DNA of 64,000 nt from the IMG/VR virus record IMGVR_UViG_3300037805_000644, positions 62,001 to 126,000 of that record. One strand, written 5' to 3'. Each line of letters opens with the position of its first letter. Position 1 is the stretch's first letter. This document shows, one piece after another, positions 12,701-26,559 of the stretch. The translations under genes and the position numbers were made by a program. The notes below the pieces were generated by a model. That model saw only the letters and a list, made by a program, of their open reading frames with translations. It was not told the origin of the DNA and did not search any database.

Positions 12701-15700
12701 CTGGCCGTTGAACAGGGAGACCTGGGAGGTGCCGCCGGAGCCAAACTCCTGGCGGTAAGTGGTCCTCAGATCGACCCCTGCCTGAGGAGTCAAGAAAGGC
12801 TCACTCCTGGCGTAAGCGAAACCGCCACCTGGGAAAGCAGAATCAGAGGCGGCCGTCATCAGGAGGCTGCCTCCAGACAGCATCTCCTGGCCGAAACTCC
12901 CTGTCCGCCACCAGCCGTAACTTGCATCCTCATCGGGAAGGTTGGCGGTGAAATCCGGGGAAACTGTCTGGACATGACCGCGCACGGAGGACGCGTCTGG
13001 GGTGACCCCATACCGGAAAAAGGACCACTCGGCTTGATTCGATGCCTGGCGGCTAAGGGAGCCCCAAAACACCTTGCCATGAGTGCTCGCCACATTCGAC
13101 TTGGCGCCATCCAGCACCACACCCTCGTCAGGCAGGGCCAGGGAGGTCTCTGCCCAGGTCGGGAGGAGATCAGGAGCTGTACCATCCACCTCGGTGAGGG
13201 TTGCCGTGCGGTCACCAGACATCTGGAGCACCGCCACCTCTTGGGTGGGGTCTGCCGTCAATCGGTACGTGGCGGGCTTACCCGACCACTTCGTCTCAAA
13301 GATAGCAACGGGGAACTTGTTACCCCAGAGGTCGTGGAACTCGGGGAACTCGGGGGAGACCCCGAGCGTCGAGGTTCCATTGGTCTGGTGGACCACGCTG
13401 GTCAGGGTGTATGCCCCTGCCTGAGTGCCCTCCAGGATTTGGAAACGGTCGCCCACCGCCACATCCTGAGGGATCTCTGCGGTCACTGCGCCACAGGCGC
13501 CTTGCCCCGCGTTGACCGTCAAGGTGGTCTGGGGGCCGATCTGCCAACTACCCACCAGGTCAGGGGAGTCGGGGTTGAGCAGCAAGCCGACATGCTCCAG
13601 CTCATTCACCAGGAGGGCACCAGCCAGGTACATCTTCACGTCGTCATGGAAACCGAACCCGATGCCCGTCCAAATGCCGTCCGGGGTCGGCGTGGTGTCC
13701 ACCGTGAATCGACCGACCACGAACATGGAGGCGGGGAAGCTGAGATCGATGTCACGATGATACACTGCGACAGGCTCTACACCCGTGGGGTCAGGGTTGC
13801 CCGCAGTATCGATGACCGTGTAGGTCCCTGCCCCAGGGTTCTGCTGCCCCGCGTCCGACCCGAACAGCTCCCAAGCCTGGGGAGCTGCTTGGGGTGTGGT
13901 GTCCCCCGCGAAGGCCACCGAGGCCGCCACGGTCTGATGGGCGAACCCCGCGACCTGAGACCGATGGGGGTGGTTGTTCAGCCTCAGTGTGGTGCTGCTG
14001 TTCAACAGGGCACTGTAAGCCCTCTCAAAGCCCATGTAGCGGTGGCCGATGAGCTTGGGGGTGGGGCGGCCCTTGGGGGGGCCCAGGAGAATGGTGTACG
14101 GGTAACACTGGGTTGGCGCCGAGCCCTTGGGGTGGTCCGGGAGGTCTTGGTTCTCCTGACCACGGCCCACAGGGTTGTGGTGTCCCCGAGGGTTGTCGTA
14201 CTTGTTCAGCACGACACCCTTGGTGTTCAGCCCACCCATGTACATCCGGGGGCTGGCCATCCACTGGTAATCCACCGCCACATCGATCTGCCCTGGGGGC
14301 ATTCGAGGGATGGGGATGCTCACCTCAACTCGGCCGGTATAGGGGTTGACTCGGTTGACTGCAACCTCAACCCCGTTGACCTCAACCGTCACGTCCTGCT
14401 TGCTGGCAGGGGTCCCGTCACCGTGTCCCTTAACCAGGGGGCCTCGGAAAGTCTTGAGCCAGTCCTTAGTCAGGGCCCCTGAGCCCGTGAACTGGGCGGT
14501 TTTCTCGTGCAGGAAGTTCCAAGCCCCTGAGTACACCGTTGAGCTTGCGGTCAGGTGCAGGCGGGTGGTGTCCAGGGTGAGGGTGCCTGCCAATGCAGAC
14601 TGGTCCACAACCACCTGAGCAGTGCCGCCCGCCAGGGCCACCGGAGGTGCCACCAGGTTGATCAGATCGGTGGAGTAAACCGGAAGCTCATCGAACATCC
14701 AGACCGCTTTGTCCGATTTCTGGTTCATCACCAGAGAAAGGGTGTGAGATCCGGCCGTCCAATCGTAACCCGTGAGCTTGACGCTGATCCCTGCCAGGCC
14801 CGAGATCACCCAGAGTGTGGGCACCCCACCAGGGCCATCCCAACCACAAACCAGGCGCATCTCAAAGAGAGCCCCGAAACCATAGGCGAGCCCGAAAACA
14901 CCGGTGTCTCCCACAGGTGCAGTGAACGAGACCTGGTTGAAATCCAGGTCTACCCGGACGGTGGCTCCATCAGCAGCGTTACCCGTCTGGTCCAAGAAAT
15001 CTAGGCTGACCTCGCCGACACCAGGATCTACCGCCAGCCGGTACACCGATCCCGTGATGACGCCTGTGATGGCGCCCGTGAGCCCGGAGACGTAGTCCGC
15101 CGACACGAGGGAGGTGGGGTCACCCTGGGAACTGTCCCAGTCAGATACGAACGAGGGTGAAATCCGGCTCCGGTACAGGATAGAGGTTTGCCCGAGGGTG
15201 GTGACCTCTGCCTTGGTGTTGTCTCCCTGATAGGGGAACTCCACCGACTGGGCCGTCAGGAGTACGGGGTATGCTGGGGTGATTCCCCGGTCATCCTCGA
15301 AAGCCCACTCTTCCGGGTCCTCAATGGTGAGCCGAGCATTGTCTGCTGGGGTTGTCGGGTATGCCGAGGGGTCCAGCATGGGGTGCTCAAAGGTCACCAA
15401 GAGCTTGTCACCCGCACTCGGGGTGATGGTGTGGGCCGGGGCCTCTCCTCGCGTGAGGATGGAGACATCGCTGGCCTGCATGGCGTTGCCACCCAGGTCG
15501 CGGGGGCCGTCCCCCCTGATCGTGTATGTGCCCCCCAGCGTGGTGCCGCTGTGACGGAGGATGACCGAGGTAACCTCAGCCACGGTGTCGCCTGCGGTGA
15601 CATCCACAGAGCCCACCGTCTCCACGGTGACGCCTGTGAGAGTGGCGGGGGCCGCACCACTCACAGGGATGAGGGTGTAGCTCGCCGGGTCAAGCAAAGC

Positions 15701-16060
15701 GGGGTCATCCGGCTGCATGCCCTCAGAGAAAAATACCTCGATCTCGTACCCACTCAGGCTCAACGCCGAGCTGATTTGAGGGCCCACGGCATCCGTTGAA
15801 CCGTAAGGGCCCAGGCCGTAAGGATCCCCACCATAGCCGCCGTCAAGCGCCACGGGACTGGACGGCCAATGGGAAGAGCCACCATAGCCCGCCAGCCCGA
15901 ATCCGGTGCCGCCTTGCTTGGTGTCGTGGGGGCCATAGCCGACCCCCCCGTAACCGGCACCCGGGGGGTGCGGGACACAGGGGAGCGTTCCCCCTTCAAC
16001 GGGGAAGGGGCCGAAGCCAAAGGGGCTTTGGCTAAAGCAGACGCTGGGGTCGGTGCTCAA
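9734..16060 (-). CDS. Very large baseplate or receptor-binding protein (2108 aa) with N-terminal GYG/PYG repeats and lectin-like beta segments
   Basis: TTG start with GGAGG upstream. It contains GYGGVGYG, GFGLAGYGG and GYGGDPYGLGPYGS repeats, and segments such as HLYRCVVDASTDTVLVYVDD resemble ConA/LamG beta-sandwiches. Confidence 0.7.
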   Translation of the reverse strand: MSTDPSVCFSQSPFGFGPFPVEGGTLPCVPHPPGAGYGGVGYGPHDTKQGGTGFGLAGYGGSSHWPSSPVALDGGYGGDPYGLGPYGSTDAVGPQISSALSLSGYEIEVFFSEGMQPDDPALLDPASYTLIPVSGAAPATLTGVTVETVGSVDVTAGDTVAEVTSVILRHSGTTLGGTYTIRGDGPRDLGGNAMQASDVSILTRGEAPAHTITPSAGDKLLVTFEHPMLDPSAYPTTPADNARLTIEDPEEWAFEDDRGITPAYPVLLTAQSVEFPYQGDNTKAEVTTLGQTSILYRSRISPSFVSDWDSSQGDPTSLVSADYVSGLTGAITGVITGSVYRLAVDPGVGEVSLDFLDQTGNAADGATVRVDLDFNQVSFTAPVGDTGVFGLAYGFGALFEMRLVCGWDGPGGVPTLWVISGLAGISVKLTGYDWTAGSHTLSLVMNQKSDKAVWMFDELPVYSTDLINLVAPPVALAGGTAQVVVDQSALAGTLTLDTTRLHLTASSTVYSGAWNFLHEKTAQFTGSGALTKDWLKTFRGPLVKGHGDGTPASKQDVTVEVNGVEVAVNRVNPYTGRVEVSIPIPRMPPGQIDVAVDYQWMASPRMYMGGLNTKGVVLNKYDNPRGHHNPVGRGQENQDLPDHPKGSAPTQCYPYTILLGPPKGRPTPKLIGHRYMGFERAYSALLNSSTTLRLNNHPHRSQVAGFAHQTVAASVAFAGDTTPQAAPQAWELFGSDAGQQNPGAGTYTVIDTAGNPDPTGVEPVAVYHRDIDLSFPASMFVVGRFTVDTTPTPDGIWTGIGFGFHDDVKMYLAGALLVNELEHVGLLLNPDSPDLVGSWQIGPQTTLTVNAGQGACGAVTAEIPQDVAVGDRFQILEGTQAGAYTLTSVVHQTNGTSTLGVSPEFPEFHDLWGNKFPVAIFETKWSGKPATYRLTADPTQEVAVLQMSGDRTATLTEVDGTAPDLLPTWAETSLALPDEGVVLDGAKSNVASTHGKVFWGSLSRQASNQAEWSFFRYGVTPDASSVRGHVQTVSPDFTANLPDEDASYGWWRTGSFGQEMLSGGSLLMTAASDSAFPGGGFAYARSEPFLTPQAGVDLRTTYRQEFGSGGTSQVSLFNGQRMASLETILYAEDAGENRYVSMSAASFTGILNPSAQSWVEAGGVLDKTFGQQSFTTSGEGGWISYLDQQAIPLDTAADSGGRVMVLHIAVPTFTANVNGDTGIEMTAEVGIGTYRAVTLTLRGGVTPGVRAISGSTIVGQFDFDWTGGELHLYRCVVDASTDTVLVYVDDVLKATLDLTLFTSAGSGNTACSVGSFGTDLAGADDAAISATVVWRAVSVETSPLSTIKRALGVALRLPTSDYSAVSINDFVVPRTDGLSVPNSSTSAVLVEWDWRNNMEVRMVLDPLWGLSVLRPDLALPGGYTPEDAGTPGTGFHTRKVEPSAAWINVEYGNLPKDRRRFGSVLFGHLAQKVGQTRWAELSYEIYRHWKDDLKQPEGMVLNKFNIITSAELGEDKVMETVETETLDNRRLTLKPFHIYASRVYKVVDSGLIEPILTDEMWDFDTGSQTLTLTPDSEGNPRTFSADHAKVTVLFVPGKPVTETYLKSQELLQSLTRLNEGTPAYPKSQVAQTEKRVAVANDLRELDDPDAVLAANVLADADRFLGHGVPGNGDLDTYYEQMSFFEVDNGGETGLIQFPCEATELDGISGFTDQEGDPIYEVGGAGAALGGVGASANHTDTGTLTGRAFGGHVLELSGTKFTEQKMGPQSSAFPQKGGMPKGYLYASGGGFVGPTVNGSGAIINGNDPLGGTLAPGSAVLWPSYPAQSPGVQRGRGEGRIYQRTDWYIRLESVVINVPDGAPIEAADTQDLVEDFSALGLFSDAAPPSEPHTALINPDGVGYLDGAAFALMEGAGDYSRYGPWGGLDSLSPRRDDAYIEFRNTLQDGDTVEVYKNGIALPEIFTAKAVPVGPRDFAVAPQPHVDLAAAIMADAITSPWFSAATAGLTWAGNFAVLLEAQEVVAQGVYVGLRGVTGAGGILLLGTIPFVHGVTTISLLSGGAKILQSSLLHGGAGSVDLNGQHDSLLGMVALGGSVLPAGVVTETILHVP

Positions 16061-16114: not shown

Positions 16115-19100
16115 TCAGACGATGAACCAGTTAGTTCCGTCCGAGTACACCGTTGCCGAAGCCCAGTCTGCAATGAGCACCAGAGGCGCTACGGCCCCGT
16201 CGATGGTCTCTGCCGCAGGAACCTGGATGTTGACGGCGTGGGTGGCAGCGTTGCCGACCTCGTCCTTGATGGTCACCCGACGACCAGCCGAAGCTGCGGG
16301 GAGGGTGATGTCCAGGGGGGCTGCCCCTGTGGCCGTGTCCACCCCGATGATATCCTCGGTGGTGATCACCAGGTTGACTACGGTGTGGGCATAAGGGGGG
16401 CTAACCGAAGCGGAGAGGGTGCCTGAGACAACCACATCCCCATCGAAAGTGATCTCCCCAGATGCGGAACACCGGAAGGTGCTCACATCGGGGTAAGCAC
16501 CGGGGACCTCAACGGCACCTGAGGCGAGACGCAACTCCCCCAGGGCAATCAGAAGGTCTCCAGGTGCCCCCGCCGGAACATTGTCCCCCACAACCATCAG
16601 GGCAGAAAGGGTACCCACACTGCCCGAAGTCAGCCGGAGGGTGCCGCCATTATCCGAAGCCACGATGTGGCCGGCAGAAGCTGTCGTGATACTGGATTGC
16701 ACCGTGGCGTAGTTGGTCCCGTCCGGGATGCTCACCGCAATGATGGAGCCGTCAGCAGCCTGGAGGAACAAGGTCCCCCCCGAGTTCACGGGGATGTTCC
16801 CGGGGAAAGGGTTGGCCGCGTCCAAGGTCATGGACGTGCCCGTGTCGGGGCACGCCACGATCACGACACCATGGTTGGCGTTGGCAGCGTAGCCCGGCGC
16901 CAGCAAGAGATCCCCTGCCTCACCTACCAGGTCAGTGGCGTCCATGTGGTCACCCGCACGGACCACGGCATCACCGGCAGTTCGGGCGGTTCCGGCTGCG
17001 GTGTCCAGACGTGACCCACCTGCCAGAATGGCCGAGCCCAGTTCGCCTTGGTTGGCGTCTCCGAGATCCCGGGACCCTACTTTCATGTTGTAGGCGTTGA
17101 GTTCAGTGGCTGTGCCAAGCTGAGGGCCCGCAATGACCCGAGCCACGGCATTGACCGAGGCAGCCGCGCCGTATCCGGGCGGGTACACCGTACGCCCAAA
17201 CCGCAAGATCGGACCCCCACCCCAGGTGTTGGGGTCGAGGGTGATCTCCGAGCCTTTGCCGTCCACCCCGAACGACCCGACATCAAGCTGACCTTCCACC
17301 TGGAGGCCGCCGTTGAGGTCGGCGTCAAACCCAGTGGTGAAACCGACAGGACTGCTTGCCCCGGTGATCTGCACAGCACCATCATCCGCCAGGATGGATC
17401 GCCCCAGCCCAGCGCCCAGGGTGAGGGGGCTCGGGTTTGCCAGGCCGTTGTAGGCTGTGGTGAGGCTCCAGAAGGGGGAGATGCCCAAAGGCATCACCAG
17501 ATTCAGCAGGATGTCAAGAACATCCTGGACATTCTTGTTACCCACCTGGGCCGTCGCCGGCACTGCGGGAGACACGTCTGTGCCGTCCCACCCTTGCCAG
17601 TCCCCGTCATAGCCCAGGGAGAACGCCCGGAGGGTGTGCTCCATGGTTGGGGTGCCCGTGGTGAGCAGGAACGGTGAAGGGGGCGTTGCATTGCGGGGCA
17701 TCGTGAGCCCCGAGGTGGTGACGGTGACCGCGCCCACAGCCTGGATATCATCCACCGTGATCTGGCCTGCAAGGACCACATTGGTGAGGGATACGGGAAC
17801 GCCCCCAGGCTTTGTGGCTGCACCTGCACCGAAGCCGTCCAGGACGAGGCCCTGGGCTGCGGTAGCACCCTGGAGGACGCCACCCGTGAACTGAGCCGGA
17901 CCATACACCCGAGCTGCAATACCATTGGAGGACACCAGGTCACAGTCCCGGAGGGTGATCTGGGCAGCCGGCATCTCAAAGAGGGATGCGTTGACCTCAA
18001 AGGCAGTGCGGACCGCCTTGAGATCCACGTCCACCAGCTTGACAGTGGTGGCATTGAGGTCAATCTTCAAGGCCACGTCGGTGTCAGCGTTGTCCTGGTA
18101 GCTCACCACGGAACTACTGAACAGGAGCAGGGAGGCGTAGTTGGCTCCCGTTACCGAGAGAGCGGCACCAGGCCCGATGGCCGTTGCCATTTGGGCGATG
18201 ACACAGCCCTCGGCTCGGAAGACCCCCCGATCCACCAGGAGCACAGGAGCCACAGCAGCGGCGTCAGTGTTCTCCAGACGGAGGTTCATCAGGTGGACCT
18301 GATCCGTGTCGGCCGAAGGCTGGAACCGGTGAGACTGACCCGCAGCGTTGGCCGTGCGGAGCACCACCTCGTGTGAGCCCTCAGCCGGAGTCGATGCCGA
18401 GGCCCACTGAGCCGTGCCCTCACCCATGAGGTGGATCCAGGGCTGGAAAACCAGGTCCTCAGAGTACAGACCCGGCTTGATCTTGATGAGCCAGGGCTCT
18501 CCCTGAGAGGGGGCGGGCTCACCTCGCCCAACCGAACCGGCAGCGTAAGTGATGGCCTCGCCGACGGTAGAGAAATCCCCATGCTTCTCAGCAGTGATGA
18601 TCAGCTCGTCTGCTGTACCTGAGGTGTCGGACCCAGGCAGCTCGAACGTGTTGGTCGCGTCGTCAGAGTTGGCCGTGCGGTCACGTCCCCGGTTGGAGTC
18701 CACGTACAGGACTCGACCCGAACTGGCCGTTCTGCGCATGATGCCCAGAATGCGCTGGATGTTCTCGTTCTGGATGCCGCTCCACCCCTTGGCAGACGCA
18801 TCGACCGGAATGGTGCCGGTCTCATCACGCCGCTCGCCCGCAGCAACCATCAAGATGTTGCCGAACTTGGTCTTGTAAGCGGTGCGGATGAACTGGGTGC
18901 TCTCCGTCGGCAGGCCCTGATCAACGACCAGGCGGACAAGGTAAGCACCTTCATTGTCCACGATGAAGCGGGCCGTGGAGGTGTTGGAGTTTTCGGGGGC
19001 CAGGAGGGCTGCCACTGAGGCGGTGCCGTCCGGCGCATTCGGGGTGTCGGCCAGAGTCCAGGCGTAAGTGGTTGCGGCGTCCAACGACTCCAACACCACC

Positions 19101-19204
19101 TCATTGCCCTTGCGGAGGTCCGCACGACTAACTTCCGAGAGGGGCGCCCCTACCTGGACGCCACCCGGGGTCTCATTTACTGTGCTGCGGATACGAGCGG
19201 GCAT
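16115..19204 (-). CDS. Tail fibre or tailspike-like receptor-binding protein (1029 aa)
   Basis: PKD/Ig-like N-terminus (TYAWTL...EGAYLVRLVV). The GDFSTVGEAI...IKIKPGLYSEDL motif typically opens a pectin-lyase-like beta-helix. The C-terminal DITLPAASAGRRVTIKD...TIDG...TVYSDGTNWFIV domain is typical of fibres. Confidence 0.75.
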   Translation of the reverse strand: MPARIRSTVNETPGGVQVGAPLSEVSRADLRKGNEVVLESLDAATTYAWTLADTPNAPDGTASVAALLAPENSNTSTARFIVDNEGAYLVRLVVDQGLPTESTQFIRTAYKTKFGNILMVAAGERRDETGTIPVDASAKGWSGIQNENIQRILGIMRRTASSGRVLYVDSNRGRDRTANSDDATNTFELPGSDTSGTADELIITAEKHGDFSTVGEAITYAAGSVGRGEPAPSQGEPWLIKIKPGLYSEDLVFQPWIHLMGEGTAQWASASTPAEGSHEVVLRTANAAGQSHRFQPSADTDQVHLMNLRLENTDAAAVAPVLLVDRGVFRAEGCVIAQMATAIGPGAALSVTGANYASLLLFSSSVVSYQDNADTDVALKIDLNATTVKLVDVDLKAVRTAFEVNASLFEMPAAQITLRDCDLVSSNGIAARVYGPAQFTGGVLQGATAAQGLVLDGFGAGAATKPGGVPVSLTNVVLAGQITVDDIQAVGAVTVTTSGLTMPRNATPPSPFLLTTGTPTMEHTLRAFSLGYDGDWQGWDGTDVSPAVPATAQVGNKNVQDVLDILLNLVMPLGISPFWSLTTAYNGLANPSPLTLGAGLGRSILADDGAVQITGASSPVGFTTGFDADLNGGLQVEGQLDVGSFGVDGKGSEITLDPNTWGGGPILRFGRTVYPPGYGAAASVNAVARVIAGPQLGTATELNAYNMKVGSRDLGDANQGELGSAILAGGSRLDTAAGTARTAGDAVVRAGDHMDATDLVGEAGDLLLAPGYAANANHGVVIVACPDTGTSMTLDAANPFPGNIPVNSGGTLFLQAADGSIIAVSIPDGTNYATVQSSITTASAGHIVASDNGGTLRLTSGSVGTLSALMVVGDNVPAGAPGDLLIALGELRLASGAVEVPGAYPDVSTFRCSASGEITFDGDVVVSGTLSASVSPPYAHTVVNLVITTEDIIGVDTATGAAPLDITLPAASAGRRVTIKDEVGNAATHAVNIQVPAAETIDGAVAPLVLIADWASATVYSDGTNWFIV

Positions 19205-19256
19205 GGTGTCTCCATCGGGTTAGTCGGCCCTCACCTCACAGGTGGGTATAGGCCAA

Positions 19257-20687
19257 CTACAGGAAGAACAGGTTTGAGGCATCCTCAGCCGCAATTCCCT
19301 TGGGTTCTTGTATGCCAAGGCGGTCCACCTCGACATAATAGCTTTGCCCGGTCACCGACTCAGGCATTCGGCTATCCAGGCGCAGGATGCTGGGTGCCAC
19401 ACGCACTCCGGTCGCAGGGCCTGATGCAAACCCTACCCGCCCACCAGCAGCACCCAACACCGTCTTGAGACGATAGCTGCCTGCATTTGCCCCTGTGGCG
19501 AACGTCAGCACCTCCCCCTCAGCAGCAAGGGCCCAGTCTTGACTGGAGTCCGTGATGTCGTCCCCGCTCACTGTGGCGGACCCTGAGAGCCCTGTGGGGC
19601 TTGTGGTGTACGCCCTGGCGGTACTGTCGTCCCCCCCAGGGAACACGATGCGCTCCACCACTCGATAGCGACCCAGTTCCCGGCGGTCTGTCGAGGCCAC
19701 TGTCCCCTCTTGACCCCCGGCATGGATGCCGTTTGGTCCCGAGGTGACCACCAGAGGTGCGGCTGCCGAGATGTTGGAGAAGTCCCGGTTCACGTCCTGG
19801 AACAAGCTCCGATCTGACAGGGTCTCCCCTTGAGTGCCGGATACGCTCTTGGCGCCGTGGCAATAACGCCGGAAATCCTCGTAGTAATACGAGTGCATGT
19901 CCCAGCTCAGGGTCCCTGCAAACAGCTCACCGAAAGTCTCCGTGAATTGATGCCGGTACTCATACAGGGTGTGGGCCGGCTTCAAAGCCCTCATGACAAT
20001 TCGGACGTTCTCCATCAGGATGAAAGGATCCTCAGGGAACCGCTCCAGCCCTGACCCTGCATCGAGGTAATTTGCGCTGACCTCAAAGCAAAACTGATCG
20101 TCGAGCCCCCAAGCCGAACCTGAGCCCAGCTTCCGGGCCTCGACGGCTTTCTCCAACACCGTGTAAGCGATATCCTGAACCAGCCCGGGGTTCTCACACC
20201 TCGCCAACCCCTGGGTCGCCCTACCAACCTCAGCCAGGGACTCCTCAATGGTCCCCTTGGTTGCCCCCTGCAAGAGGAACCGGACCATGCTCTGGAGGAA
20301 CTGACGGTAAGTCAGGTCGCCCTGGAGGTCGGGGTATCCATCGGTCTGGGCATCCGGGAACACGAGCTGGCCCAGCATTTGGAACAGGAACTCCGACCGG
20401 GTGTAATCGTACATCGTATCCGCCCAGACCTCCTGAGCGGTGATCTGGAATTCTGCGATCTGTTCAGCGGCGGCCTGGAACTGGAGGGTGTAAAAGGGCC
20501 CCGTCACCTGCGAGATGTAGTTGCTCGGCAGGAGCTGGAGGAACACCTTCATGATGTTGTCCACCTGGTCTCGGACTTGCTGCTTGTGCTCCTGGGACCC
20601 TTGGGCTTTCTGATCCGTATGGACAGGGGCAGGGTTCTGGGCTACGAGCCCAGGGAGGAGGTTCTTGTTGACGGGCTTGTCTGCCAT
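19257..20687 (-). CDS. Baseplate wedge protein, P2 gpI-like (476 aa)
   Basis: Follows baseplate J once the GNAT-like insert is ignored. LLQLLPSNY at the N-terminus and RIVMRALKPAHTLY match the gpI-type KPAH motif. Confidence 0.7.
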   Translation of the reverse strand: MADKPVNKNLLPGLVAQNPAPVHTDQKAQGSQEHKQQVRDQVDNIMKVFLQLLPSNYISQVTGPFYTLQFQAAAEQIAEFQITAQEVWADTMYDYTRSEFLFQMLGQLVFPDAQTDGYPDLQGDLTYRQFLQSMVRFLLQGATKGTIEESLAEVGRATQGLARCENPGLVQDIAYTVLEKAVEARKLGSGSAWGLDDQFCFEVSANYLDAGSGLERFPEDPFILMENVRIVMRALKPAHTLYEYRHQFTETFGELFAGTLSWDMHSYYYEDFRRYCHGAKSVSGTQGETLSDRSLFQDVNRDFSNISAAAPLVVTSGPNGIHAGGQEGTVASTDRRELGRYRVVERIVFPGGDDSTARAYTTSPTGLSGSATVSGDDITDSSQDWALAAEGEVLTFATGANAGSYRLKTVLGAAGGRVGFASGPATGVRVAPSILRLDSRMPESVTGQSYYVEVDRLGIQEPKGIAAEDASNLFFL

Positions 20688-20699
20688 CAGTTACGCCCC
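20684..20699. repeat. 16-bp direct repeat CCATCAGTTACGCCCC, copy 1 (GNAT-like stop and gpI-like start junction)
   Basis: Exact match to 21253-21268. The minus strand reads GGGGCGTAACTGATGG (Gly-Arg-Asn-stop overlapping ATG). Confidence 0.95.
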
Positions 20700-21256
20700 C
20701 ACACCAAGAAACCCTCATGGGGGTACCTGCGGCGAATCGAGTTCCAAACCCTAAAGGCGGCAGGCTTAGTGGGCTCCCCTGCACATACCCCAGGCCCAAT
20801 AGCCGCTCGGTGCTTGGTGGCCATCTGAATGATCTCTGCATAAAACAGATTGCCCAGACCTCTCCGCCTCAGCTCAACATCCAGCATGGTGTGCCCGATG
20901 AACCAAAGGTTCTGGATCTGGGGGTGCTTTGAGGTCAGGGTATCGAAATCTGTGCGGCACTGGCTTGTGGTGTAGGACGCCCGCCGCCGGCGAGGCAGCG
21001 GGGGGATGCCAGACCTCACCTGCTCCATCGCATGATCGTCTTTCTCCTGGGAGGTCATATGCAGATCGGTAGCATACACCCACCCCACTGCCCGCCGACC
21101 CTCCAAAATCTTCACTACCCCTCCCTTGGGGGAGTCCTTGCGGAATACCTTGAAGTCCCGATCCAACTCCTCCGCAATCTGAGCAACTACCTGGTCAAGT
21201 TCCGCGCCCGCTTGGCGCTGCAACCACTGCCCCGCAACCCGTGTGACTGAATCCAT
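20687..21256 (-). CDS. GNAT-fold acetyltransferase-like protein (189 aa) with a short N-terminal leader
   Basis: HTMLDVELRRRGLGNLFYAEII matches GNAT motif A (R/Q-x-x-G-x-G). It is followed by TKPAAFRVWNSI, resembling the motif B helix. TGATG coupling occurs at both ends. Confidence 0.6.
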   Translation of the reverse strand: MDSVTRVAGQWLQRQAGAELDQVVAQIAEELDRDFKVFRKDSPKGGVVKILEGRRAVGWVYATDLHMTSQEKDDHAMEQVRSGIPPLPRRRRASYTTSQCRTDFDTLTSKHPQIQNLWFIGHTMLDVELRRRGLGNLFYAEIIQMATKHRAAIGPGVCAGEPTKPAAFRVWNSIRRRYPHEGFLVWGRN

Positions 21257-21268
21257 CAGTTACGCCCC
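21253..21268. repeat. 16-bp direct repeat CCATCAGTTACGCCCC, copy 2 (baseplate J stop and GNAT-like start junction)
   Basis: Exact match to 20684-20699. Confidence 0.95.
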
Positions 21269-24200
21269 TGTACCCGAGCCAAGAAATCGGTGTCCTCGTC
21301 AAAAGTGAGGTCGATCTCACCAATCTCCAGGTATTCCGTGGGACCCGGCTCAATGTTCTTGACTCCCGCATCACCCTGCACCTGGTAAGTCACCGTGTAC
21401 TGGTGATCCAGAGGGGTGTCGTCCTTGGTCAGGGACACCAAGATCCGGTTGGCTGTGATCTCCCGACGTTTCTCGATGATCTCCGCCCCGGAGGCAAACG
21501 GGTAAGCCGCCTGGAGGGTGGCGTCGTCAGAAAAACCGGGGATCTCCAAACCCTGGGCACCGATGATGAAGGCAGAACCGGACCCGTTGAGCATGGGCAC
21601 CCCGTTGATGTTCGGAGCGATCACCTTGTTCTCCAGCAGATCCTCATCTGCGAAAACGCCCCGGAACTTGGTCTCCTCACCACCACTGTCGATGGTGGAT
21701 GCCTCCAGGGGGTTCTTGAGCAACCACACGTTGACGGCACCTGAGGTGGCGTTCCAGGTATCCACAGCAAACACGTCTGAGGACTGGGTGGTTGTGATGA
21801 ACTCCCGCACCACCAGGGCACCGTCTCCCTTGGACATCTTGGTGAGGGGGACGACGGGGTAAGCTACGCCGGACACGTTCTCGATGACCCCAAGAACATC
21901 TGCCTGTCGGACGGGCTCCCCAAGCACCAGTGCGCCAAAGTAGCGGTCCAGAGCCGTTCGGATAGCCCCATCCACGGTGTCCACGGACACCCTGCGTTGG
22001 TTGGCATTCTCCAAGACCACTGTCACCGTGAGGTCCACGGGCACGTTGACCGCCTCCTTGGCGACCACATCAGCGGTGATGTGGCGATCCGGGTTAATGG
22101 CGCTCTCCGTCAGGGACACCAGCGCATTGGTGGTGTACAAAACGGTGAAGTTCTCATCGTACTTGTAGCTGATGAGCAAGGTCTGCCCCTCAGAGATCGG
22201 TGAGCCCGAGGTCACCTGGATACCCAGAGGGGTCGCGGAGTCGCCGGTGATGATGGTGTACTCAGGGGTCAGTGAGGCGAAGGGGCCAACGTAAGTCGTC
22301 GCCCCGGTCTCATCCGTGACGACCACAGAGTAAGGGTTGGCCCCGAGGCGGTTAACATACTCAACGCCATCCAGGATCACATGCTGCTCACCGGTCACCT
22401 CAATGGGCGTCCCACTCGGGATGGTATCCCCGGCATCCGTCAGGGGTTCCGTCACCTGAACATAGTCCCCAGCTTCGGTCGAGCGGCCCAGCTCCAACGG
22501 GTCGCTGGCCTGGTACAGGTCGAAGATATCTTCGTCCAGCTCACCGCTGACCTCTCCAGTCATGTCCCCCACAGAGCGGACAGGCTGCCTAGCAAAGGTG
22601 TGCTTGTTGCTTGTCCGGTAACGGTAACTGCCCTTGACCACGTCCAGCAGGCCCAGGATTGCGGGGTCATTGAGGGCGGTGTCAAGCTGGATGACGTTGT
22701 AAGCCACCACGGTGGTGTTGGTCAGGTCAAAGGTGGCGCCCTTGGTCTCGTTGACCAGCTCAATGTCGAACTCAGGGTAATCCAGCATCTCAATGATGGG
22801 GTTGTCCTCAGAGAGGCTGGGGTCAACGGCCCGGAGTCTGAGATCCTTGGGGTCCCCAACCGGCTCGAACTGCACGCCCGTCTTACTCTCAAAGGAGAAA
22901 GCAAAACTGTCCGTGACTGTGCTCAGGTTCTCCCCTCTCAGCCAGATATCCACCTTGCCGCCCACATGGCGCCCGCTCTCGTTGCGGTCTCGCTGCATGA
23001 GGGGGTGGCCGGCGTCCACCACATTGACCTGCTCGACCCCAGGGACATCCACGGCATTCTTCACGTAACCCCGGAGAGTGCCAGAGTCCACCGAAGACAG
23101 GGCGTTCATGCCCCGGGCTGCCAGGTCTCGGTTCGACTCCTCAGTCAAGCCGCCACTGATAGCCGAGTCGTTGGTGACCTCGACGCCCACGGGAGCACCC
23201 GAGACGGTGCCGTTCTGGCCTGGGGCCAGGTTGCTGCCCAGCCCCACGTCCTCAGCCTGCACGAAGGCTGTGGCAGAGTAACGGCCGGTGATCGGGTTGA
23301 AGAAAGAACCTGCACCTGAGCTGGTGATAGATACGGAGCTGGTGAGGCGGTAACCCACACCACCCAGCACCACCCTTGTGCCGATGCCGAAGCTGAGGCT
23401 CGTGGTCGGGCGGGAGCGGGTGTAGATGGTCACAGATCCTCGGGCTCGGCGACCACTCCGCCGTGTCTTCCCGTAGTTGCTCGCCAGCTTTTCAAAGGTG
23501 TTGTCAATGAGCTGCTGAACCGAGCTGGTGCTCTCCAAGAAGAACGCCTGCTTGAGTGCGATCTTGTAGTCCGACTGCTCAACCGGAATGGACACCCCAG
23601 ACAGGCTGGGGTCGTCGATGGGGAGCAACGTGGCGAAGCTGCCGGCGCGATGCAAGAAATCGATGATGAACCGCTGGCGCTCCGCCTCCGTGGAGAAGGG
23701 GTCAATGAATGTGTCCCGCAATACAGAGCCGGGCTTCACGTCAATCTGAGGCTGAGCCCGGAAAATGCTAAGCACCGTGTCACGCACGATATTCTGGCGG
23801 CTCACCGCAGGGAATGTACCGACGTTGGGGACCAACTCCAGAGGGGAACCCGACAGCTCGGGGCTAAACGCGGTCTCGTACTCGGTGCCCTCGGTGAAGT
23901 AAACCGCCGTCACCACATAGTAAACGGGATCTGACTTGGGGATGGCGTTGAAGGCCGCGTTTGGGATGGCCGGGTTGGTGGGTGAGTTGAAGCTCGCCAG
24001 CCGGTCGTGGACGAAGCTGTACCTAGAAAGGCTCCGCACTGCCTCCACCGAGATGGTTGAGCGGACTCGGGTGGTGTTGTCGGGGATCTCCAGAGCCTGA
24101 TCGAAATCAGTCTGGAGGACCGTGTCGTCCTGGTCCTCCTGGGTGGCCTTGTAGACCATGAATAGGGGGTCCGCCGCAGGGGAGCCGTCGTTGAGGGTGG

Positions 24201-24768
24201 CCACGTTGGCATCCACCGTCAGCTCCGCCAGGGTGGTCAAGTCCTCGATCTGCTCACCCGAGATAACCAGGGAGGGGTTGATGCGGGAATAGCCCTCAGC
24301 CCCACCACCGGGCTGGGTTGAGGCATAGAAGTTGTACCCGATGACCTCAGAGGCATCGAGACCATCCACAGTGACCTTAATGGCCTCGTTGAACCGCTCA
24401 AGGAACACGCCGGTGGGCTCGTCGAGGGACACTCCAAGGTCACTGTCCTGCACAAGCCGGGCAGTGATGCGGCTCGGCTTTGAGACCGTGCCGTTGGAAA
24501 AGACCGCCTTGACCTGGATGTCGTTATCTCCAGCCAAGAGCTGGATCCCGTCAGGGAAAGCAGAGGGGTTGGGCACCACGAAAGTCGTGCCCTCAAAAGC
24601 GATCAGGTCTGGATCGGAGGTGAAAGCCGCGCCACGGACAGACACCTGCATGTCCACCGTGTCCGCGTCCATCTCCCCTGAGAAGTGCCGGGAATCAATA
24701 GTAGTCGAGAAGGTGTAATCCTCTCGGAGGACTGCATCAGGACCCTCAAACTTGGGCAGGGTGGGCAT
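21256..24768 (-). CDS. Baseplate J-like wedge protein (1170 aa) with N-terminal Ig/FN3-like extension
   Basis: Classic J series: RARGSVTIYT...VQAEDVGLGSNL...VTNDSAISGGLTEESNRDL...GTLRGY...VPGVEQVNVV...GGKVDIWL. Confidence 0.9.
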   Translation of the reverse strand: MPTLPKFEGPDAVLREDYTFSTTIDSRHFSGEMDADTVDMQVSVRGAAFTSDPDLIAFEGTTFVVPNPSAFPDGIQLLAGDNDIQVKAVFSNGTVSKPSRITARLVQDSDLGVSLDEPTGVFLERFNEAIKVTVDGLDASEVIGYNFYASTQPGGGAEGYSRINPSLVISGEQIEDLTTLAELTVDANVATLNDGSPAADPLFMVYKATQEDQDDTVLQTDFDQALEIPDNTTRVRSTISVEAVRSLSRYSFVHDRLASFNSPTNPAIPNAAFNAIPKSDPVYYVVTAVYFTEGTEYETAFSPELSGSPLELVPNVGTFPAVSRQNIVRDTVLSIFRAQPQIDVKPGSVLRDTFIDPFSTEAERQRFIIDFLHRAGSFATLLPIDDPSLSGVSIPVEQSDYKIALKQAFFLESTSSVQQLIDNTFEKLASNYGKTRRSGRRARGSVTIYTRSRPTTSLSFGIGTRVVLGGVGYRLTSSVSITSSGAGSFFNPITGRYSATAFVQAEDVGLGSNLAPGQNGTVSGAPVGVEVTNDSAISGGLTEESNRDLAARGMNALSSVDSGTLRGYVKNAVDVPGVEQVNVVDAGHPLMQRDRNESGRHVGGKVDIWLRGENLSTVTDSFAFSFESKTGVQFEPVGDPKDLRLRAVDPSLSEDNPIIEMLDYPEFDIELVNETKGATFDLTNTTVVAYNVIQLDTALNDPAILGLLDVVKGSYRYRTSNKHTFARQPVRSVGDMTGEVSGELDEDIFDLYQASDPLELGRSTEAGDYVQVTEPLTDAGDTIPSGTPIEVTGEQHVILDGVEYVNRLGANPYSVVVTDETGATTYVGPFASLTPEYTIITGDSATPLGIQVTSGSPISEGQTLLISYKYDENFTVLYTTNALVSLTESAINPDRHITADVVAKEAVNVPVDLTVTVVLENANQRRVSVDTVDGAIRTALDRYFGALVLGEPVRQADVLGVIENVSGVAYPVVPLTKMSKGDGALVVREFITTTQSSDVFAVDTWNATSGAVNVWLLKNPLEASTIDSGGEETKFRGVFADEDLLENKVIAPNINGVPMLNGSGSAFIIGAQGLEIPGFSDDATLQAAYPFASGAEIIEKRREITANRILVSLTKDDTPLDHQYTVTYQVQGDAGVKNIEPGPTEYLEIGEIDLTFDEDTDFLARVQGRN

Positions 24769-24771
24769 GGT

Positions 24772-25884
24772 CTATCGACCTCCGAGGAACAGGCCGTTCG
24801 AGCCCATCAGAGCGACGACCTCGGGAACCGTGAACACGGTGTTGAGTTGAATAGGTTCGGATGAGGCGTTCTGGACCCACACATCCACGAGGAACGTCGT
24901 CAGATCTTGCTCATGGGGCAGTACCTGGATGCTGAGCACCGCATACAGGCGCTCCTTGGGGCTGACCGGCTGTACCTCAGCCTGTGCCTTCTGGAGCCGC
25001 TGGTAACGGGTCAGTGCCCGCCGGATGTCATCCTGGAGGGCGGCGGCCACATTACCAATGGCCTTGCTCCCAATACGGGAGCGGATGGTGGTCCCGTACC
25101 AGTTGTGGTACGGGTTTGAGCCCCGATCCGTCAGAATCACCTTGAGGGCCGCCTGCTGGAGCAGATCCTCGTCGTCCACAAAGACGGGGTTCCCGTCCAC
25201 AGAGAACCGGATATCGTTCTCGACGTAAGTGGCGCGGCATCGAAGACACCGAGAGACCGGCACCGAGTAAGTCACCTTGATGGTGGGGTTGCTCCTAACC
25301 CTCGAAGTGAATTTGGGGGCCCTGTTGGTGATGGTGTCCGGTCGGATCTCCAGGTTCCAGGAGGGGTACAGGCGGCGTCCTCGGGCAGACCTTTGCCGGG
25401 TGTTGCCTGTGGCACCGAAACCCAGACTCTCAGCACCAGTGCCCGAGATCCTGACGAAACTATCGGGGCCCACCGTGTTGGTGTCCGAGATGAGCAGATG
25501 GCCGTTGATGTTCTCCGCCAGGGCGAGCTGGCTGGTTAGACCTTGCCGCATGAGCTTCTGAATGACCTGGTCAGCACCCCACCGGACCTTACCCGTGATG
25601 CCGAGGGAGGCCGTGAAAGACCCTGCGGGTGTCTCAATGGTGAGGGTGTCCTCACCTTGGGTGAGGGTGAACGGGCCGGAGTCGGTTGAGAAGATCTGGG
25701 CCACCGAGGAGAGCCCTGTCTGGGGGATCACCAGGCCCGGGTCATCATTGAGCATAACCCGCACGGTCCCCGCCGTCGCCACGGGCTGACGGGTCAAGAG
25801 CGTTCTGCGATCCGTGTCCAGGCGCACCACTTCCTCCACCGTCAGGTGAGGACACGCCCATCCCAGTTGAAAATCTTGGCTCAT
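24772..25884 (-). CDS. Baseplate wedge initiator, T4 gp25 / P2 gpW-like, with N-terminal extension (370 aa)
   Basis: The C-terminal DIRFSVDG...LLQQAALKVILTDRGSNPYHNWYGTTIRSRIG is gp25-like. The gene lies immediately upstream of baseplate J. Confidence 0.8.
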   Translation of the reverse strand: MSQDFQLGWACPHLTVEEVVRLDTDRRTLLTRQPVATAGTVRVMLNDDPGLVIPQTGLSSVAQIFSTDSGPFTLTQGEDTLTIETPAGSFTASLGITGKVRWGADQVIQKLMRQGLTSQLALAENINGHLLISDTNTVGPDSFVRISGTGAESLGFGATGNTRQRSARGRRLYPSWNLEIRPDTITNRAPKFTSRVRSNPTIKVTYSVPVSRCLRCRATYVENDIRFSVDGNPVFVDDEDLLQQAALKVILTDRGSNPYHNWYGTTIRSRIGSKAIGNVAAALQDDIRRALTRYQRLQKAQAEVQPVSPKERLYAVLSIQVLPHEQDLTTFLVDVWVQNASSEPIQLNTVFTVPEVVALMGSNGLFLGGR

Positions 25885-26012: not shown

Positions 26013-26276
26013 ATGTACCGAGACGTTGAGGGTGTGGCAGAAGACTGGGGAACACGCGGGAGTGGGACCCCCTCCAAGAGGATCGCCGACGGGGTGTTCC
26101 AGATGGTCACCGACGCAGGAGCGCCCAACCTCACCACGGTGGAGGTGGAGACCCCGGAGGATGCCCTGGTCCTCATCATCGAAGCGAAAGTGTTCGAGTT
26201 GAAGTACCCCTTCGACGATGACGACATCCAAGACAAGATCAACGCCTTCCTCGACGGTGAGCCCGGGGACCGCTAG
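26013..26276 (+). CDS. Small acidic hypothetical protein (87 aa)
   Basis: AAGGAG RBS, ATG start; its stop overlaps the next GTG start (TAGTG). Confidence 0.75.
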   Translation: MYRDVEGVAEDWGTRGSGTPSKRIADGVFQMVTDAGAPNLTTVEVETPEDALVLIIEAKVFELKYPFDDDDIQDKINAFLDGEPGDR

Positions 26277-26545
26277 TGGGTCTGCAAGGCCGGGTTGCAG
26301 GCATCTGCACAGGTTGCGGGTCCCGGCCCGGTGATCCTCCGATCACTTGGGGCGGGGGTGGTGTATTCTGTGCCTCCTGCGTGGACCTCTTTGGGGGAGC
26401 CGATCTAGCCAGACAGCGGCAAAAACAGAAGCGGGAAAAAGCCTTGAAATGGAGATCCGAAGGGCTCTCTTACCGCAAGATTGGAGATAAGCTGGGGATC
26501 AGCCTCCAAGCCGCCGCCCAGCTCATCAAGCGAGCTGGCGGGTAA
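26276..26545 (+). CDS. Zinc-finger plus helix-turn-helix protein (89 aa)
   Basis: CTGC...CASC pairs followed by RSEGLSYRKIGDKLGISLQAAAQLIKR, a sigma70-region-4 or homeodomain-like HTH. Confidence 0.75.
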   Translation: MGLQGRVAGICTGCGSRPGDPPITWGGGGVFCASCVDLFGGADLARQRQKQKREKALKWRSEGLSYRKIGDKLGISLQAAAQLIKRAGG

Positions 26546-26559
26546 CTGACAGGAGAACC

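What the first reader, a model, noticed from the sequence alone, without database searches (positions are those of the whole stretch)
20684..21268. GNAT-like gene precisely bracketed by a 16-bp direct repeat that duplicates the J/gpI coupling junction
Seen: CCATCAGTTACGCCCC occurs at 20684-20699 and 21253-21268, 569 bp apart. Baseplate J ends ...QGRN* and the GNAT-like protein ends ...WGRN*, using identical DNA that includes the TGATG stop/start overlap. Deleting one repeat plus the intervening DNA would exactly restore J coupled to the gpI-like gene, the normal myovirus order. TGATG itself is common here (32314, 46821), but 11 further identical bases are about 1 in 4^11 by chance for a given pair of junctions. 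The core GTAACTGA also sits at the 26542-26549 junction of the plus-strand cassette. Inference: a cassette inserted or excisable by microhomology recombination without disturbing translational coupling, meaning a plug-in cargo slot in the baseplate operon.
Basis: partly seen in the sequence, partly recalled or inferred. Interest (0 to 1): 0.8.

Follow-up and report, generated by a model that had tools for sequence, protein, structure and literature searches.

The report
Cargo-gene slot in phage baseplate operon
In a huge marine phage, a small acetyltransferase-like gene sits exactly at the stop/start overlap of two baseplate genes, flanked by a duplicated 16-base copy of that overlap; most related phages have this junction empty, and about a quarter carry different small genes there.

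Summary
CCATCAGTTACGCCCC occurs exactly twice in the window, at 20684-20699 and 21253-21268. Each copy covers a TGATG stop/start overlap on the minus strand: J/ORF189 and ORF189/the next gene.

Comparative data bear out the slot idea.
- Of 80 non-redundant relatives, 60 have J coupled directly to the downstream gene. The other 20 carry at least 10 unrelated cargo families at that junction.
- The slot state changes at least 13 times on the tree.
- The sister phage (83% identity) has the same J end but a different, ART-like cargo. Homology breaks exactly at the repeat positions.

ORF189 is a divergent GNAT-fold protein. Its relatives lie outside baseplate operons, one as a domain inside a 2103-aa polyvalent protein. 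The family natively ends in ...VWG, so only the last two codons, the stop and the ATGG are copied from the J end.

My best reading is that the repeat is a footprint of microhomology-mediated insertion that duplicated the coupling junction. It is not an active cassette site: no other occupied slot has a repeat this long, no recombinase is present, and contigs from four samples show no deletion joint. The third GTAACTGA site is chance.

This is a new variant of a known kind (phage accessory-gene hotspot), of moderate interest.

The parts
21253..21268 (-). Left (upstream) copy of the 16-bp repeat. It holds the last codons of J (G-R-N), the TGA stop, and the overlapping ATG plus the first G of ORF189.
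   Evidence: The sister phage L009 has the identical J end, CAGGGGCGTAACTGATG.
20684..20699 (-). Right (downstream) copy of the 16-bp repeat. It holds the last codons of ORF189 (G-R-N), the TGA stop, and the overlapping ATG plus the first G of the 476-aa gene.
   Evidence: The GGGG overlaps the family-native W-G codons, and the remaining 12 nt look copied from the J end.
20687..21256 (-). ORF189, the cargo gene: a divergent GNAT-fold protein and the only one of its family found in the slot.
   Evidence: Sequence searches gave no Pfam or PHROG hit above threshold, but 61 homologues in a search of 1.84 billion proteins. Sub-threshold GNAT hits occur in 5 of 9 family members. The AF2 model has pLDDT 88.7. 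The top Foldseek hits are all GNAT in PDB and mostly N-acetyltransferase-domain proteins in the viral library, but weak.
20852..20869 (-). Residues R130-G135 (RRRGLG), matching the GNAT motif A (R/Q-x-x-G-x-G/A) that binds acetyl-CoA pyrophosphate.
   Evidence: R130, G133 and G135 are invariant in the close family. G133 is invariant and G135 nearly invariant in 39 sequences. The weak Pfam and PDB GNAT hits map to this stretch.
21215..21253 (-). N-terminal leader motif of ORF189, DSVTRVAGQWLQRQ, with pattern [RK][VI]Axx[WY][LVMI]xR.
   Evidence: A six-frame regex over all loci finds it only in slot cargo (window, L002, L009, L032) and in the polyvalent-protein locus L174. It forms the first part of a long N-terminal helix in the model.
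21256..24768 (-). Baseplate J-like gene (1170 aa), the upstream border of the slot.
   Evidence: PF04865 Baseplate_J, E = 7.4e-15. It is conserved upstream of the slot in nearly all relatives.
19257..20687 (-). Conserved 476-aa gene in the position that gpI holds in P2-like phages, the downstream border of the slot.
   Evidence: It has more than 320 homologues. There is no Pfam or PDB similarity to P2 gpI. In 60 of 80 lineages its start is coupled directly to the J stop.
24772..25884 (-). gp25-like sheath-initiator / baseplate wedge gene upstream of J, which sets the operon context.
   Evidence: PF10934 at 27.3 bits, below the 32.9-bit cut-off; PHROG 120, 975 and 2669 baseplate families.

Best explanation
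The stop/start overlap between the baseplate J gene and the conserved 476-aa gene behind it is a recurrent insertion hotspot for small accessory genes in this family of very large, mostly aquatic phages. In the window phage the occupant is a solo, divergent GNAT-fold enzyme gene. Its family also occurs as a domain of giant polyvalent proteins, which are thought to be injected anti-host effectors. The 16-bp direct repeat is the footprint of that insertion. The cargo's native 5' end (ATGG...) and native 3' end (...TGG GGG, the conserved W-G) were joined to the original junction ...CAGGGGCGTAACTGATGGCAGAC... at two 4-nt microhomologies, ATGG and GGGG. The 12 nt between them (CGTAACTGATGG) were copied twice. 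One replicative event with two template switches would produce this; so would one illegitimate crossover with an empty-site relative. The outcome is that J keeps its own end, the cargo gains a stop codon from the J end, and both the cargo and the downstream gene sit behind the same G-rich, stop-overlapping start context. The cargo is therefore expressed late, as part of the baseplate operon, without its own promoter or terminator. Shown: the repeat, the hotspot, the cargo swap in the sister phage, the native family C-terminus, and the absence of promoter, terminator, inverted repeats and recombinase. Inferred: the recombination mechanism, the coupling function of the duplicated junction, the acetyltransferase activity, and any virion loading or injection.
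For: Repeat: exact and non-random. Hotspot: 60 empty and 20 occupied among 80 lineages, with at least 13 state changes, 9 of them forced by well-supported branches. The occupants fall into at least 10 unrelated cargo families, almost all on the operon strand and overlapping both neighbours. Empty sites read like the predicted excision product, for example L010 CACCTGATGGCTGACAAGCC. Swap: sister L009 shares the identical J end; homology to the window stops at the ATG after the J stop and resumes at AACTRATGG before the next gene, with an unrelated 131-aa ORF in between. Native end: family members end ...EG[FY]V[VL]WG followed by 1-5 residues. P0123 ends TTG TGG GGC GGA CGA TAA and P0125 has TGG GGG TTT... 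So W-G is native to the cargo, while R-N-stop matches J. Foreign origin: the close homologues P0122 and P0125 lie beside helicase- or topoisomerase-like genes, and P0124 carries the domain inside a 2103-aa polyvalent protein. ORF189 is a singleton in the slot, and its GC3 is 0.695 against 0.736-0.773 for its neighbours. Not a classical mobile element: there is no minus-strand promoter or terminator and there are no terminal inverted repeats. GNAT fold. Polyvalent-protein context: PMC5512222.
Against: All three members of the window's own clade (window, L009, L002) have occupied slots. A recent insertion into an empty site therefore needs an unseen empty intermediate or an empty-site co-infecting relative. 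No other occupied slot shows a repeat this long. L019/L023 share only GCTGATG. L031 matches at 16 of 24 positions, but that could simply reflect the Shine-Dalgarno consensus. The microhomologies are only 3-4 nt, and the extra TTTCTTGG patch upstream of both copies is marginal (p about 0.03). GNAT assignment is weak: below Pfam cut-offs, with TM-scores of 0.3-0.4. No expression, virion or activity data exist.
Confidence: 0.6

Rival explanations
1. Allelic replacement. The repeat-flanked cassette arose earlier in another, related phage. It reached this genome by ordinary homologous recombination within the conserved J and downstream genes, so the 16-bp duplication was inherited with the cassette and no illegitimate event happened in this lineage.
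For: All three clade members have occupied slots holding three different contents, which suggests exchange among relatives rather than repeated de novo insertion. The same small-protein family (family A) sits in the slot in distant lineages. The flanks are conserved enough to recombine, at 76-84% nucleotide identity.
Against: No other phage with ORF189 in the slot was found among 5.8 billion clustered proteins, apart from the same phage in other samples. This model still needs the same microhomology event at the origin, so it moves the mechanism elsewhere without replacing it. The two copies are identical. Independent drift at the window-L009 divergence would predict about 2-3 differences over 16 bp.
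Confidence: 0.22
2. Active cassette system. The 16-bp repeats are recognition or recombination sites that let cargo be excised and inserted repeatedly, in the manner of an integron or att site, possibly by a phage- or host-encoded recombinase.
For: The repeat brackets the gene exactly, and deletion between the copies would restore the canonical junction seen in 60 of 80 relatives. Slot turnover is high.
Against: The other 19 occupied slots lack any comparable repeat, and their junction sequences all differ. There is no recombinase, no inverted repeat and no attC-like structure in or next to the cargo. Contigs from four independent seawater runs show the occupied form with no joints or variants. 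The sister's right junction has already diverged.
Confidence: 0.06
3. Chance or convergence. Both junctions independently evolved the same sequence because both need a G-rich ribosome-binding stretch, a stop codon and an overlapping ATG.
For: TGATG overlaps preceded by G-rich or Shine-Dalgarno-like sequence are common in this genome and its relatives. The cargo family natively ends in W-G (TGGGG), which supplies part of the match.
Against: Shuffles give 0.03 copies expected. None of 298 control junction pairs reaches 19 of 24 matches. Homologues end in G, GR, GK or FQASL, never in RN.
Confidence: 0.05

Closest known systems
Phage 'morons' and accessory-gene or hyper-variability hotspots between conserved structural genes (own knowledge of the moron concept from Hendrix and colleagues; hotspot survey in bioRxiv 10.1101/2024.10.15.618418, abstract seen)
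   Same: An extra gene is present or absent between two conserved, syntenic late genes. Unrelated genes occupy the same position in different relatives, and the cargo plausibly serves host interaction.
   Different: A classical moron brings its own promoter and terminator. Here there is no intergenic space at all: the cargo overlaps both neighbours by one base and carries no promoter or terminator. The insertion point is the stop/start overlap itself, and the coupling junction is duplicated.
Polyvalent proteins of phages and conjugative elements, and their solo-domain versions (Iyer, Burroughs, Anand, de Souza, Aravind 2017, PMC5512222)
   Same: The ORF189 domain occurs (42% identity) inside a 2103-aa protein that also holds an ART-like N-terminus, several HExxH motifs and a Topoisom_I domain, next to an ART-PolyVal gene. 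The paper reports GNAT domains in polyvalent proteins, typically beside ART domains, and solo versions among late structural genes. The sister phage's cargo looks ART-like.
   Different: ORF189 is a single-domain protein. Whether it belongs to either of the two GNAT families in that paper was not tested. Virion packaging and injection are unproven.
T4 Alt, a packaged and injected ADP-ribosyltransferase whose family is genomically associated with baseplate genes (as described in PMC5512222)
   Same: A host-modifying enzyme gene embedded among late or baseplate genes, which implies late synthesis and possible virion loading.
   Different: The fold differs (ART versus GNAT-like). Alt is loaded into the head by a known pathway, whereas nothing is known here.
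Target-site duplications of transposable elements and integron cassettes
   Same: A direct repeat of target sequence flanks the inserted DNA exactly.
   Different: The window's insert has no transposase, terminal inverted repeats, attC or integrase. Sixteen bp is long for a target-site duplication. Real mobile-element genes do sit in the same slot elsewhere (an RRXRR protein in L163 and a TnpB-like remnant in L141), but they are unrelated to ORF189.
Microhomology-mediated illegitimate recombination, template switching, and deletion between short direct repeats in phages such as T4 and T7 (own knowledge)
   Same: Both joints lie at 3-4 nt microhomologies, ATGG and GGGG. The result is a short duplication that could in turn mediate rare precise deletion.
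   Different: The mechanism is inferred from the scar alone. No intermediate or deletion product was observed.

Membership tests
GNAT (GCN5-related N-acetyltransferase) superfamily | Score above the curated threshold against a GNAT sequence model | tested here: not met
   ORF189's best hit is PF14542 at 12.7 bits (cut-off 30). The best score in the family is 17.3 bits for PF00583 (cut-off 20.7). GNAT models are nevertheless the only recurrent hits, in 5 of 9 members.
GNAT (GCN5-related N-acetyltransferase) superfamily | Motif A, R/Q-x-x-G-x-G/A, the acetyl-CoA pyrophosphate-binding loop | tested here: met
   R130-R-R-G133-L-G135 is present. R130, G133 and G135 are invariant in the 9-sequence alignment, and G133 is invariant and G135 nearly invariant in 39 sequences.
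GNAT (GCN5-related N-acetyltransferase) superfamily | GNAT fold | tested here: inconclusive
   The AF2 model is confident (pLDDT 88.7, pTM 0.81). All top 50 PDB matches, and most of the annotated viral matches, are GNAT or N-acetyltransferase proteins. They are weak, with E = 0.006-0.4 and TM-scores of 0.25-0.42.
GNAT (GCN5-related N-acetyltransferase) superfamily | Acyl-CoA-dependent acyl transfer activity | not testable with these tools
   This needs a biochemical assay.
Polyvalent-protein effector domains (Iyer et al. 2017) | The domain occurs within giant multi-domain proteins that combine disparate catalytic domains | tested here: met
   P0124 residues 667-837 are 42% identical to ORF189. 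The protein also has an ART-like N-terminus, several HExxH motifs and Topoisom_I, and its neighbouring gene hits ART-PolyVal.
Polyvalent-protein effector domains (Iyer et al. 2017) | Solo versions are encoded among late or virion structural genes | tested here: met
   ORF189 lies between the baseplate J gene and the next conserved baseplate-operon gene, overlapping both.
Polyvalent-protein effector domains (Iyer et al. 2017) | Packaged in the virion and delivered into the host with the DNA | not testable with these tools
   This needs virion proteomics or infection assays.
Classical moron | Presence/absence polymorphism between conserved flanking genes in related phages | tested here: met
   60 empty against 20 occupied among 80 lineages.
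Classical moron | Own promoter and terminator flanking the extra gene | tested here: not met
   One-base overlaps on both sides leave no intergenic DNA. No minus-strand promoter-like or terminator-like site lies in 19200-22000.
Transposon / IS insertion with target-site duplication | A transposase gene and terminal inverted repeats inside the direct repeats | tested here: not met
   The single ORF is GNAT-like. No inverted repeat abuts the direct repeats.
Integron-type or site-specific gene cassette | A conserved recombination site shared by different cassettes, plus a cognate recombinase | tested here: not met
   The junction sequences of 19 other occupied slots differ and lack the 16-mer. 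No integrase or recombinase domain occurs in the operon genes scanned.
P2 gpI family (the downstream gene) | Sequence similarity to Tail_P2_I or to solved baseplate wedge proteins | tested here: not met
   No Pfam hit for the protein or for 44 homologues, and the PDB profile hits are spurious. Only the gene order is gpI-like.

The most novel reading that the evidence does not exclude
The short N-terminal helix motif (D/P-x-x-x-[RK]-[VI]-A-x-x-[WY]-[LVMI]-x-R) may be a functional leader, for example a docking, virion-loading or processing signal. It is shared by three unrelated enzymatic cargos of the slot: the GNAT-like ORF189, the ~270-aa HExxH family in L032/L060, and the remnant fused to the ART-like gene in L009. 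It also occurs in front of the effector domains of a polyvalent protein and of its ART-PolyVal neighbour. If the motif is such a signal, the J|next-gene slot would be a dedicated position for exchangeable effectors that are made with the baseplate and delivered into the host at infection.
Probability: 0.2. Interest if true: 0.75.

Novelty: new variant of a known kind. Interest (0 to 1): 0.5.

Why it matters
Accessory-gene hotspots in phages are well known. This one is unusually sharply defined: a single stop/start overlap inside a baseplate operon, conserved across a large family of 200-500 kb environmental phages. New genes are spliced into it so that they inherit late expression and translational coupling without any regulatory DNA of their own.

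The 16-bp duplication is a rare, undecayed footprint that shows how such an insertion can be made without breaking either neighbour.

The cargo types (GNAT-like, ART-like, zincin-like, plus many tiny unknown proteins) overlap with the domain repertoire of polyvalent injected proteins. The slot is therefore a practical place to look for new anti-host or anti-defence effectors, and to test whether baseplate-operon cargo is loaded into virions.

Tried and rejected
Searches that found nothing useful:
- INPHARED phage genomes, by DNA and by protein: no match.
- The first metagenome scan, with a two-sequence profile: nothing.
- The genome collection: a single 59%-identity MAG contig.
- A word-indexed protein search for ORF189: only itself. 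The exhaustive phmmer search was needed.
- PHROGs: no match for any cargo.

Models that failed:
- Single-sequence AlphaFold was useless, at pLDDT 36.6. The alignment-based run succeeded.

Ideas considered and dropped:
- I first read the 27-aa ORF in L002 and the C-terminal tail of L009's cargo as vertically inherited remnants of ORF189's 5' end. I rejected this as stated. DNA identity of the motif region among window, L002 and L009 is only 42-51%, against 76-84% in the flanks, no closer than to L032/L060. L009's tail matches the N-terminus of the L032 family best. The motif is therefore a protein-level feature of several cargos.
- The blastn continuity between window and L002 for about 70 nt into the ORF is at that low identity and remains ambiguous.
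- L031 (16 of 24 in-register matches between its two junctions) looked like a second duplicated junction. I do not rely on it, because GGAGGT[GA]A is the Shine-Dalgarno consensus itself.
- The GTAACTGA at 26542 as a related junction: rejected as chance.
- Transposon, integron and classical moron membership: rejected.
- The TTTCTTGG patch upstream of both copies is only marginal, p about 0.03.
Full report
**Observation.** The 16-mer CCATCAGTTACGCCCC occurs exactly twice in the 64-kb window, at 20684-20699 and 21253-21268. No further copies appear at up to two mismatches. Shuffles give 0.03 expected, and 0 of 100 reach two copies.

All relevant genes are on the minus strand:
- a 1170-aa ORF at 21256-24768, with a Baseplate_J domain (PF04865, E = 7e-15);
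- a 189-aa ORF at 20687-21256;
- a 476-aa ORF at 19257-20687;
- upstream, a gp25-like sheath-initiator gene at 24772-25884.

On that strand both repeat copies read GGGGCGTAACTGATGG, i.e. Gly-Arg-Asn-stop with the A of TGA shared with the next ATG. J therefore ends QGRN* and ORF189 ends WGRN*.

Only one other exact 16-bp direct repeat within 3 kb exists in the window. The third GTAACTGA, at 26542, is at chance level: 3 copies against 0.55 expected. There it is an ordinary TAA stop followed by an AGGAG Shine-Dalgarno site and a separate ATG.

**Source and relatives.** The window is part of IMG/VR contig 3300037805_000644 (222,939 bp). The same arrangement is on a 240,846-bp contig of another JGI sample. 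Five seawater-metagenome runs hold the stretch. Nothing similar is in GenBank phages.

The 476-aa protein has more than 320 homologues. With a 44-sequence profile I fetched about 160 loci from IMG/VR and JGI metagenomes, plus three contigs by exact protein look-up.

**The slot.** A script located the J stop and the start of the 476-aa homologue in every locus.
- In most loci the two genes overlap by one base (T[GA]ATG) or by four (ATGA). For example, L010 reads CACCTGATGGCTGACAAGCC.
- That is the structure that deleting one repeat copy plus the intervening DNA would create in the window.
- After removing duplicates, 60 of 80 lineages are empty (gap of 18 nt or less) and 20 are occupied (57-1272 bp).
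- On a maximum-likelihood tree of the 476-aa protein, the state changes at least 13 times. Nine of those changes are forced by well-supported branches.

The occupants fall into at least 10 unrelated families:
- a family of small (69-108 aa) proteins, found in six loci and in three tandem copies in L051;
- three further families of small proteins;
- a ~270-aa HExxH family (L032, L060);
- an RRXRR nuclease-like gene in L163 (PF14239, E = 2e-27);
- a TnpB-like remnant in L141;
- a 131-aa ORF in L009;
- ORF189, which occurs only in the window phage.

Almost all cargo genes are on the operon strand and overlap both neighbours, so coupling is preserved as a rule.

**The nearest relatives.** Window and L009 are sisters (83% identity, SH-aLRT support 96), and L002 is the next lineage out (support 100).
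- L009 has the identical J end, CAGGGGCGTAACTGATG. DNA homology to the window stops at that ATG and resumes at AACTRATGG in front of the downstream gene, with an unrelated 131-aa ORF in between.
- That ORF begins ...VYHGTSS..., and its language-model look-alikes are RNA 2'-phosphotransferase, Arr and Tox-ART clusters. This is a lead towards an ADP-ribosyltransferase fold, not a demonstration.
- L002 has only 95 bp in the slot, holding a 27-aa ORF.

**What ORF189 is.**
- It has no Pfam or PHROG hit above threshold, and a word-indexed search of 5.8 billion clusters found only itself.
- Exhaustive phmmer against 1.84 billion representatives found 61 homologues. Four are close, at 38-53% identity.
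- Their contexts are not baseplate slots. P0122 lies near a DEAD helicase gene and P0125 beside a topoisomerase-like gene.
- P0124 carries the domain at residues 667-837 of a 2103-aa protein. That protein also has an ART-like N-terminus, several HExxH motifs and a Topoisom_I domain, and it sits next to an ART-PolyVal gene. This is a typical polyvalent protein in the sense of Iyer et al. 2017. That paper reports GNAT domains beside ART domains in such proteins, and solo versions among late structural genes (PMC5512222).
- The GNAT evidence is uniform but weak. Sub-threshold GNAT Pfam hits occur in 5 of 9 members. A profile search of PDB sequences gives only weak hits (best E = 0.006), all to GNAT-type or uncharacterised proteins.
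- The alignment-based AlphaFold model is confident (pLDDT 88.7). Its top PDB matches are all GNAT folds and its viral matches are mostly N-acetyltransferase-domain proteins, with TM-scores of only 0.25-0.42.
- The motif-A-like RRRGLG (residues 130-135) is conserved.

I therefore call it a divergent GNAT-fold protein. Acetyltransferase activity is inferred.

**Anatomy of the repeat.** The family alignment shows that homologues natively end ...YPHEG[FY]V[VL]WG, followed by one to five variable residues.
- At the DNA level, P0123 ends TTG TGG GGC GGA CGA TAA, and P0125 has TGG GGG TTT....
- J's end, DFLARVQGRN*, is native to J: it is identical in L009 and similar in L002.
- So in ORF189 the W-G codons (TGG GGG) belong to the cargo, while CGT AAC TGA and the following TGG match the J end.
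- The 16-bp repeat thus consists of a GGGG microhomology, then 12 duplicated bases, of which the last four (ATGG) are also the start of both the cargo and the downstream gene.

This is what one replicative event with two template switches would leave: leave the recipient at ATGG, copy the donor gene to TGGGG, then re-enter the recipient 12 nt upstream at AGGGG. A single illegitimate crossover between the cargo's 3' end and the J end of an empty-site relative would leave the same structure.

An extra identical octamer, TTTCTTGG, lies 10 nt before the J copy and 4 nt before the cargo copy. It is only marginally unexpected, p about 0.03.

The mechanism is an inference from the scar.

**Is the repeat a general or active feature?**
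- In-register comparison of left and right junctions in 19 occupied slots gives 19 of 24 matches for the window. The mean for 298 unrelated control pairs is 8.8 and the maximum is 16.
- L019/L023 share only GCTGATG. L031 reaches 16 of 24, but its shared sequence is essentially the Shine-Dalgarno consensus plus stop and start, so I do not count it.
- No minus-strand promoter-like or terminator-like site, no terminal inverted repeat and no recombinase lies in or beside the cargo.
- Logan contigs of four independent runs laid on 19000-23000 are identical to the window, span both junctions, and show no joints. Contigs drop rare variants, so this does not exclude low-frequency deletion.
- ORF189's GC3 is 0.695 against 0.736-0.773 for its neighbours, a mild hint of foreign origin.

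**Conclusion on mechanism.** The best-supported reading (about 0.6) is that the J|next-gene overlap is an insertion hotspot, and that the window's 16-bp repeat is the undecayed footprint of one microhomology-mediated insertion that duplicated the coupling junction.
- The main caveat is that all three clade members are occupied, so an empty intermediate or an empty-site partner is unobserved.
- The chief rival (about 0.2) is that the repeat-flanked cassette arose elsewhere and arrived by homologous recombination in the flanks.
- An active cassette system and chance or convergence are each unlikely (about 0.05).

**A side finding.** A short N-terminal motif, pattern [RK][VI]Axx[WY][LVMI]xR, begins ORF189 (DSVTRVAGQWLQR).
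- It also begins the HExxH family (L032; a close variant in L060), makes up most of L002's 27-aa ORF, and ends L009's ORF.
- In six-frame translations of all fetched loci, the strict pattern occurs only in these slot cargos and in the polyvalent-protein locus L174. There it precedes the ART-PolyVal gene body and occurs inside P0124. A close variant in P0124 sits just in front of the GNAT-like domain.
- DNA identity of the motif region among window, L002 and L009 is only 42-51%, far below the flanks. It is therefore a protein-level feature rather than inherited leftover DNA.

Its role is unknown. A docking, loading or processing signal for effectors is the most novel reading not excluded, at about 0.2.

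**Verdict.** It is unsupported on excision and on the third site. The 'GNAT-like' and 'gpI-like' labels need qualification: the 476-aa protein has no detectable similarity to P2 gpI. This is a new variant of a known kind, the phage accessory-gene hotspot, and is of moderate interest.

Noticed in passing
window 21215-21253 (-); L032:4188-4245; L060:3868-3925; L002:7914-7970; L009:5942-5998; L174:222 and 3424: An N-terminal motif, [RK][VI]Axx[WY][LVMI]xR, is shared by unrelated enzymatic slot cargos and by effector-domain boundaries in a polyvalent protein locus. In the six-frame scan of all loci it was found nowhere else.
   Followed up: partly
L009:5606-6001: The sister phage's slot cargo is a 131-aa ORF starting ...VYHGTSS.... 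Its language-model look-alikes are RNA 2'-phosphotransferase, Arr and Tox-ART clusters. Its last ~20 residues match the N-terminus of the L032 HExxH family (E = 0.004).
   Followed up: partly
L163:3860-4810 and L141:166-399 (-): Genuine mobile-element genes occupy the same slot in two distant relatives: an RRXRR-domain protein (PF14239, E = 2e-27) and a TnpB-like C-terminal remnant (...DIHRDVNAAINL...).
   Followed up: partly
L051:4107-5002: Three tandem, overlapping paralogues (94, 108 and 100 aa) of the commonest small slot family fill one slot. The same family appears in six loci across distant branches of the tree.
   Followed up: partly
L174:1804-8115 (P0124): A 2103-aa polyvalent protein with an ART-like N-terminus, at least four HExxH motifs, the ORF189-like domain and a Topoisom_I domain. 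The upstream ART-PolyVal gene probably starts earlier than it was called (MNTTPSNSEAASRVASMWLRR...).
   Followed up: partly
window 29306-29321 and 29429-29444: A second exact 16-bp direct repeat (CCCTCCTCCATAGGCG), 123 bp apart, lies inside the 1084-aa minus-strand ORF 29126-32380. It may reflect an internal protein repeat.
   Followed up: no
window 26013-27190 (+): A short block of plus-strand ORFs (87, 89, 134 and 80 aa) interrupts the otherwise minus-strand structural region between the gp25-like gene and the next minus-strand genes. One product has a weak HTH_23 hit in the precomputed annotation.
   Followed up: no
window 32547-43814, 9734-16060, 46821-52016 (-): The operon contains giant ORFs (3755, 2108 and 1731 aa). 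J itself is 1170 aa, several times the usual size, with the Baseplate_J match confined to residues 424-586.
   Followed up: no
window 20687-21256 (-), residues C100 and C158: Two cysteines are invariant or nearly invariant across the ORF189 family (C100, and C158 within a P155-x-x-C158 context). This is unusual for GNAT enzymes and might indicate a disulfide, a metal site or a thiol-based step.
   Followed up: no
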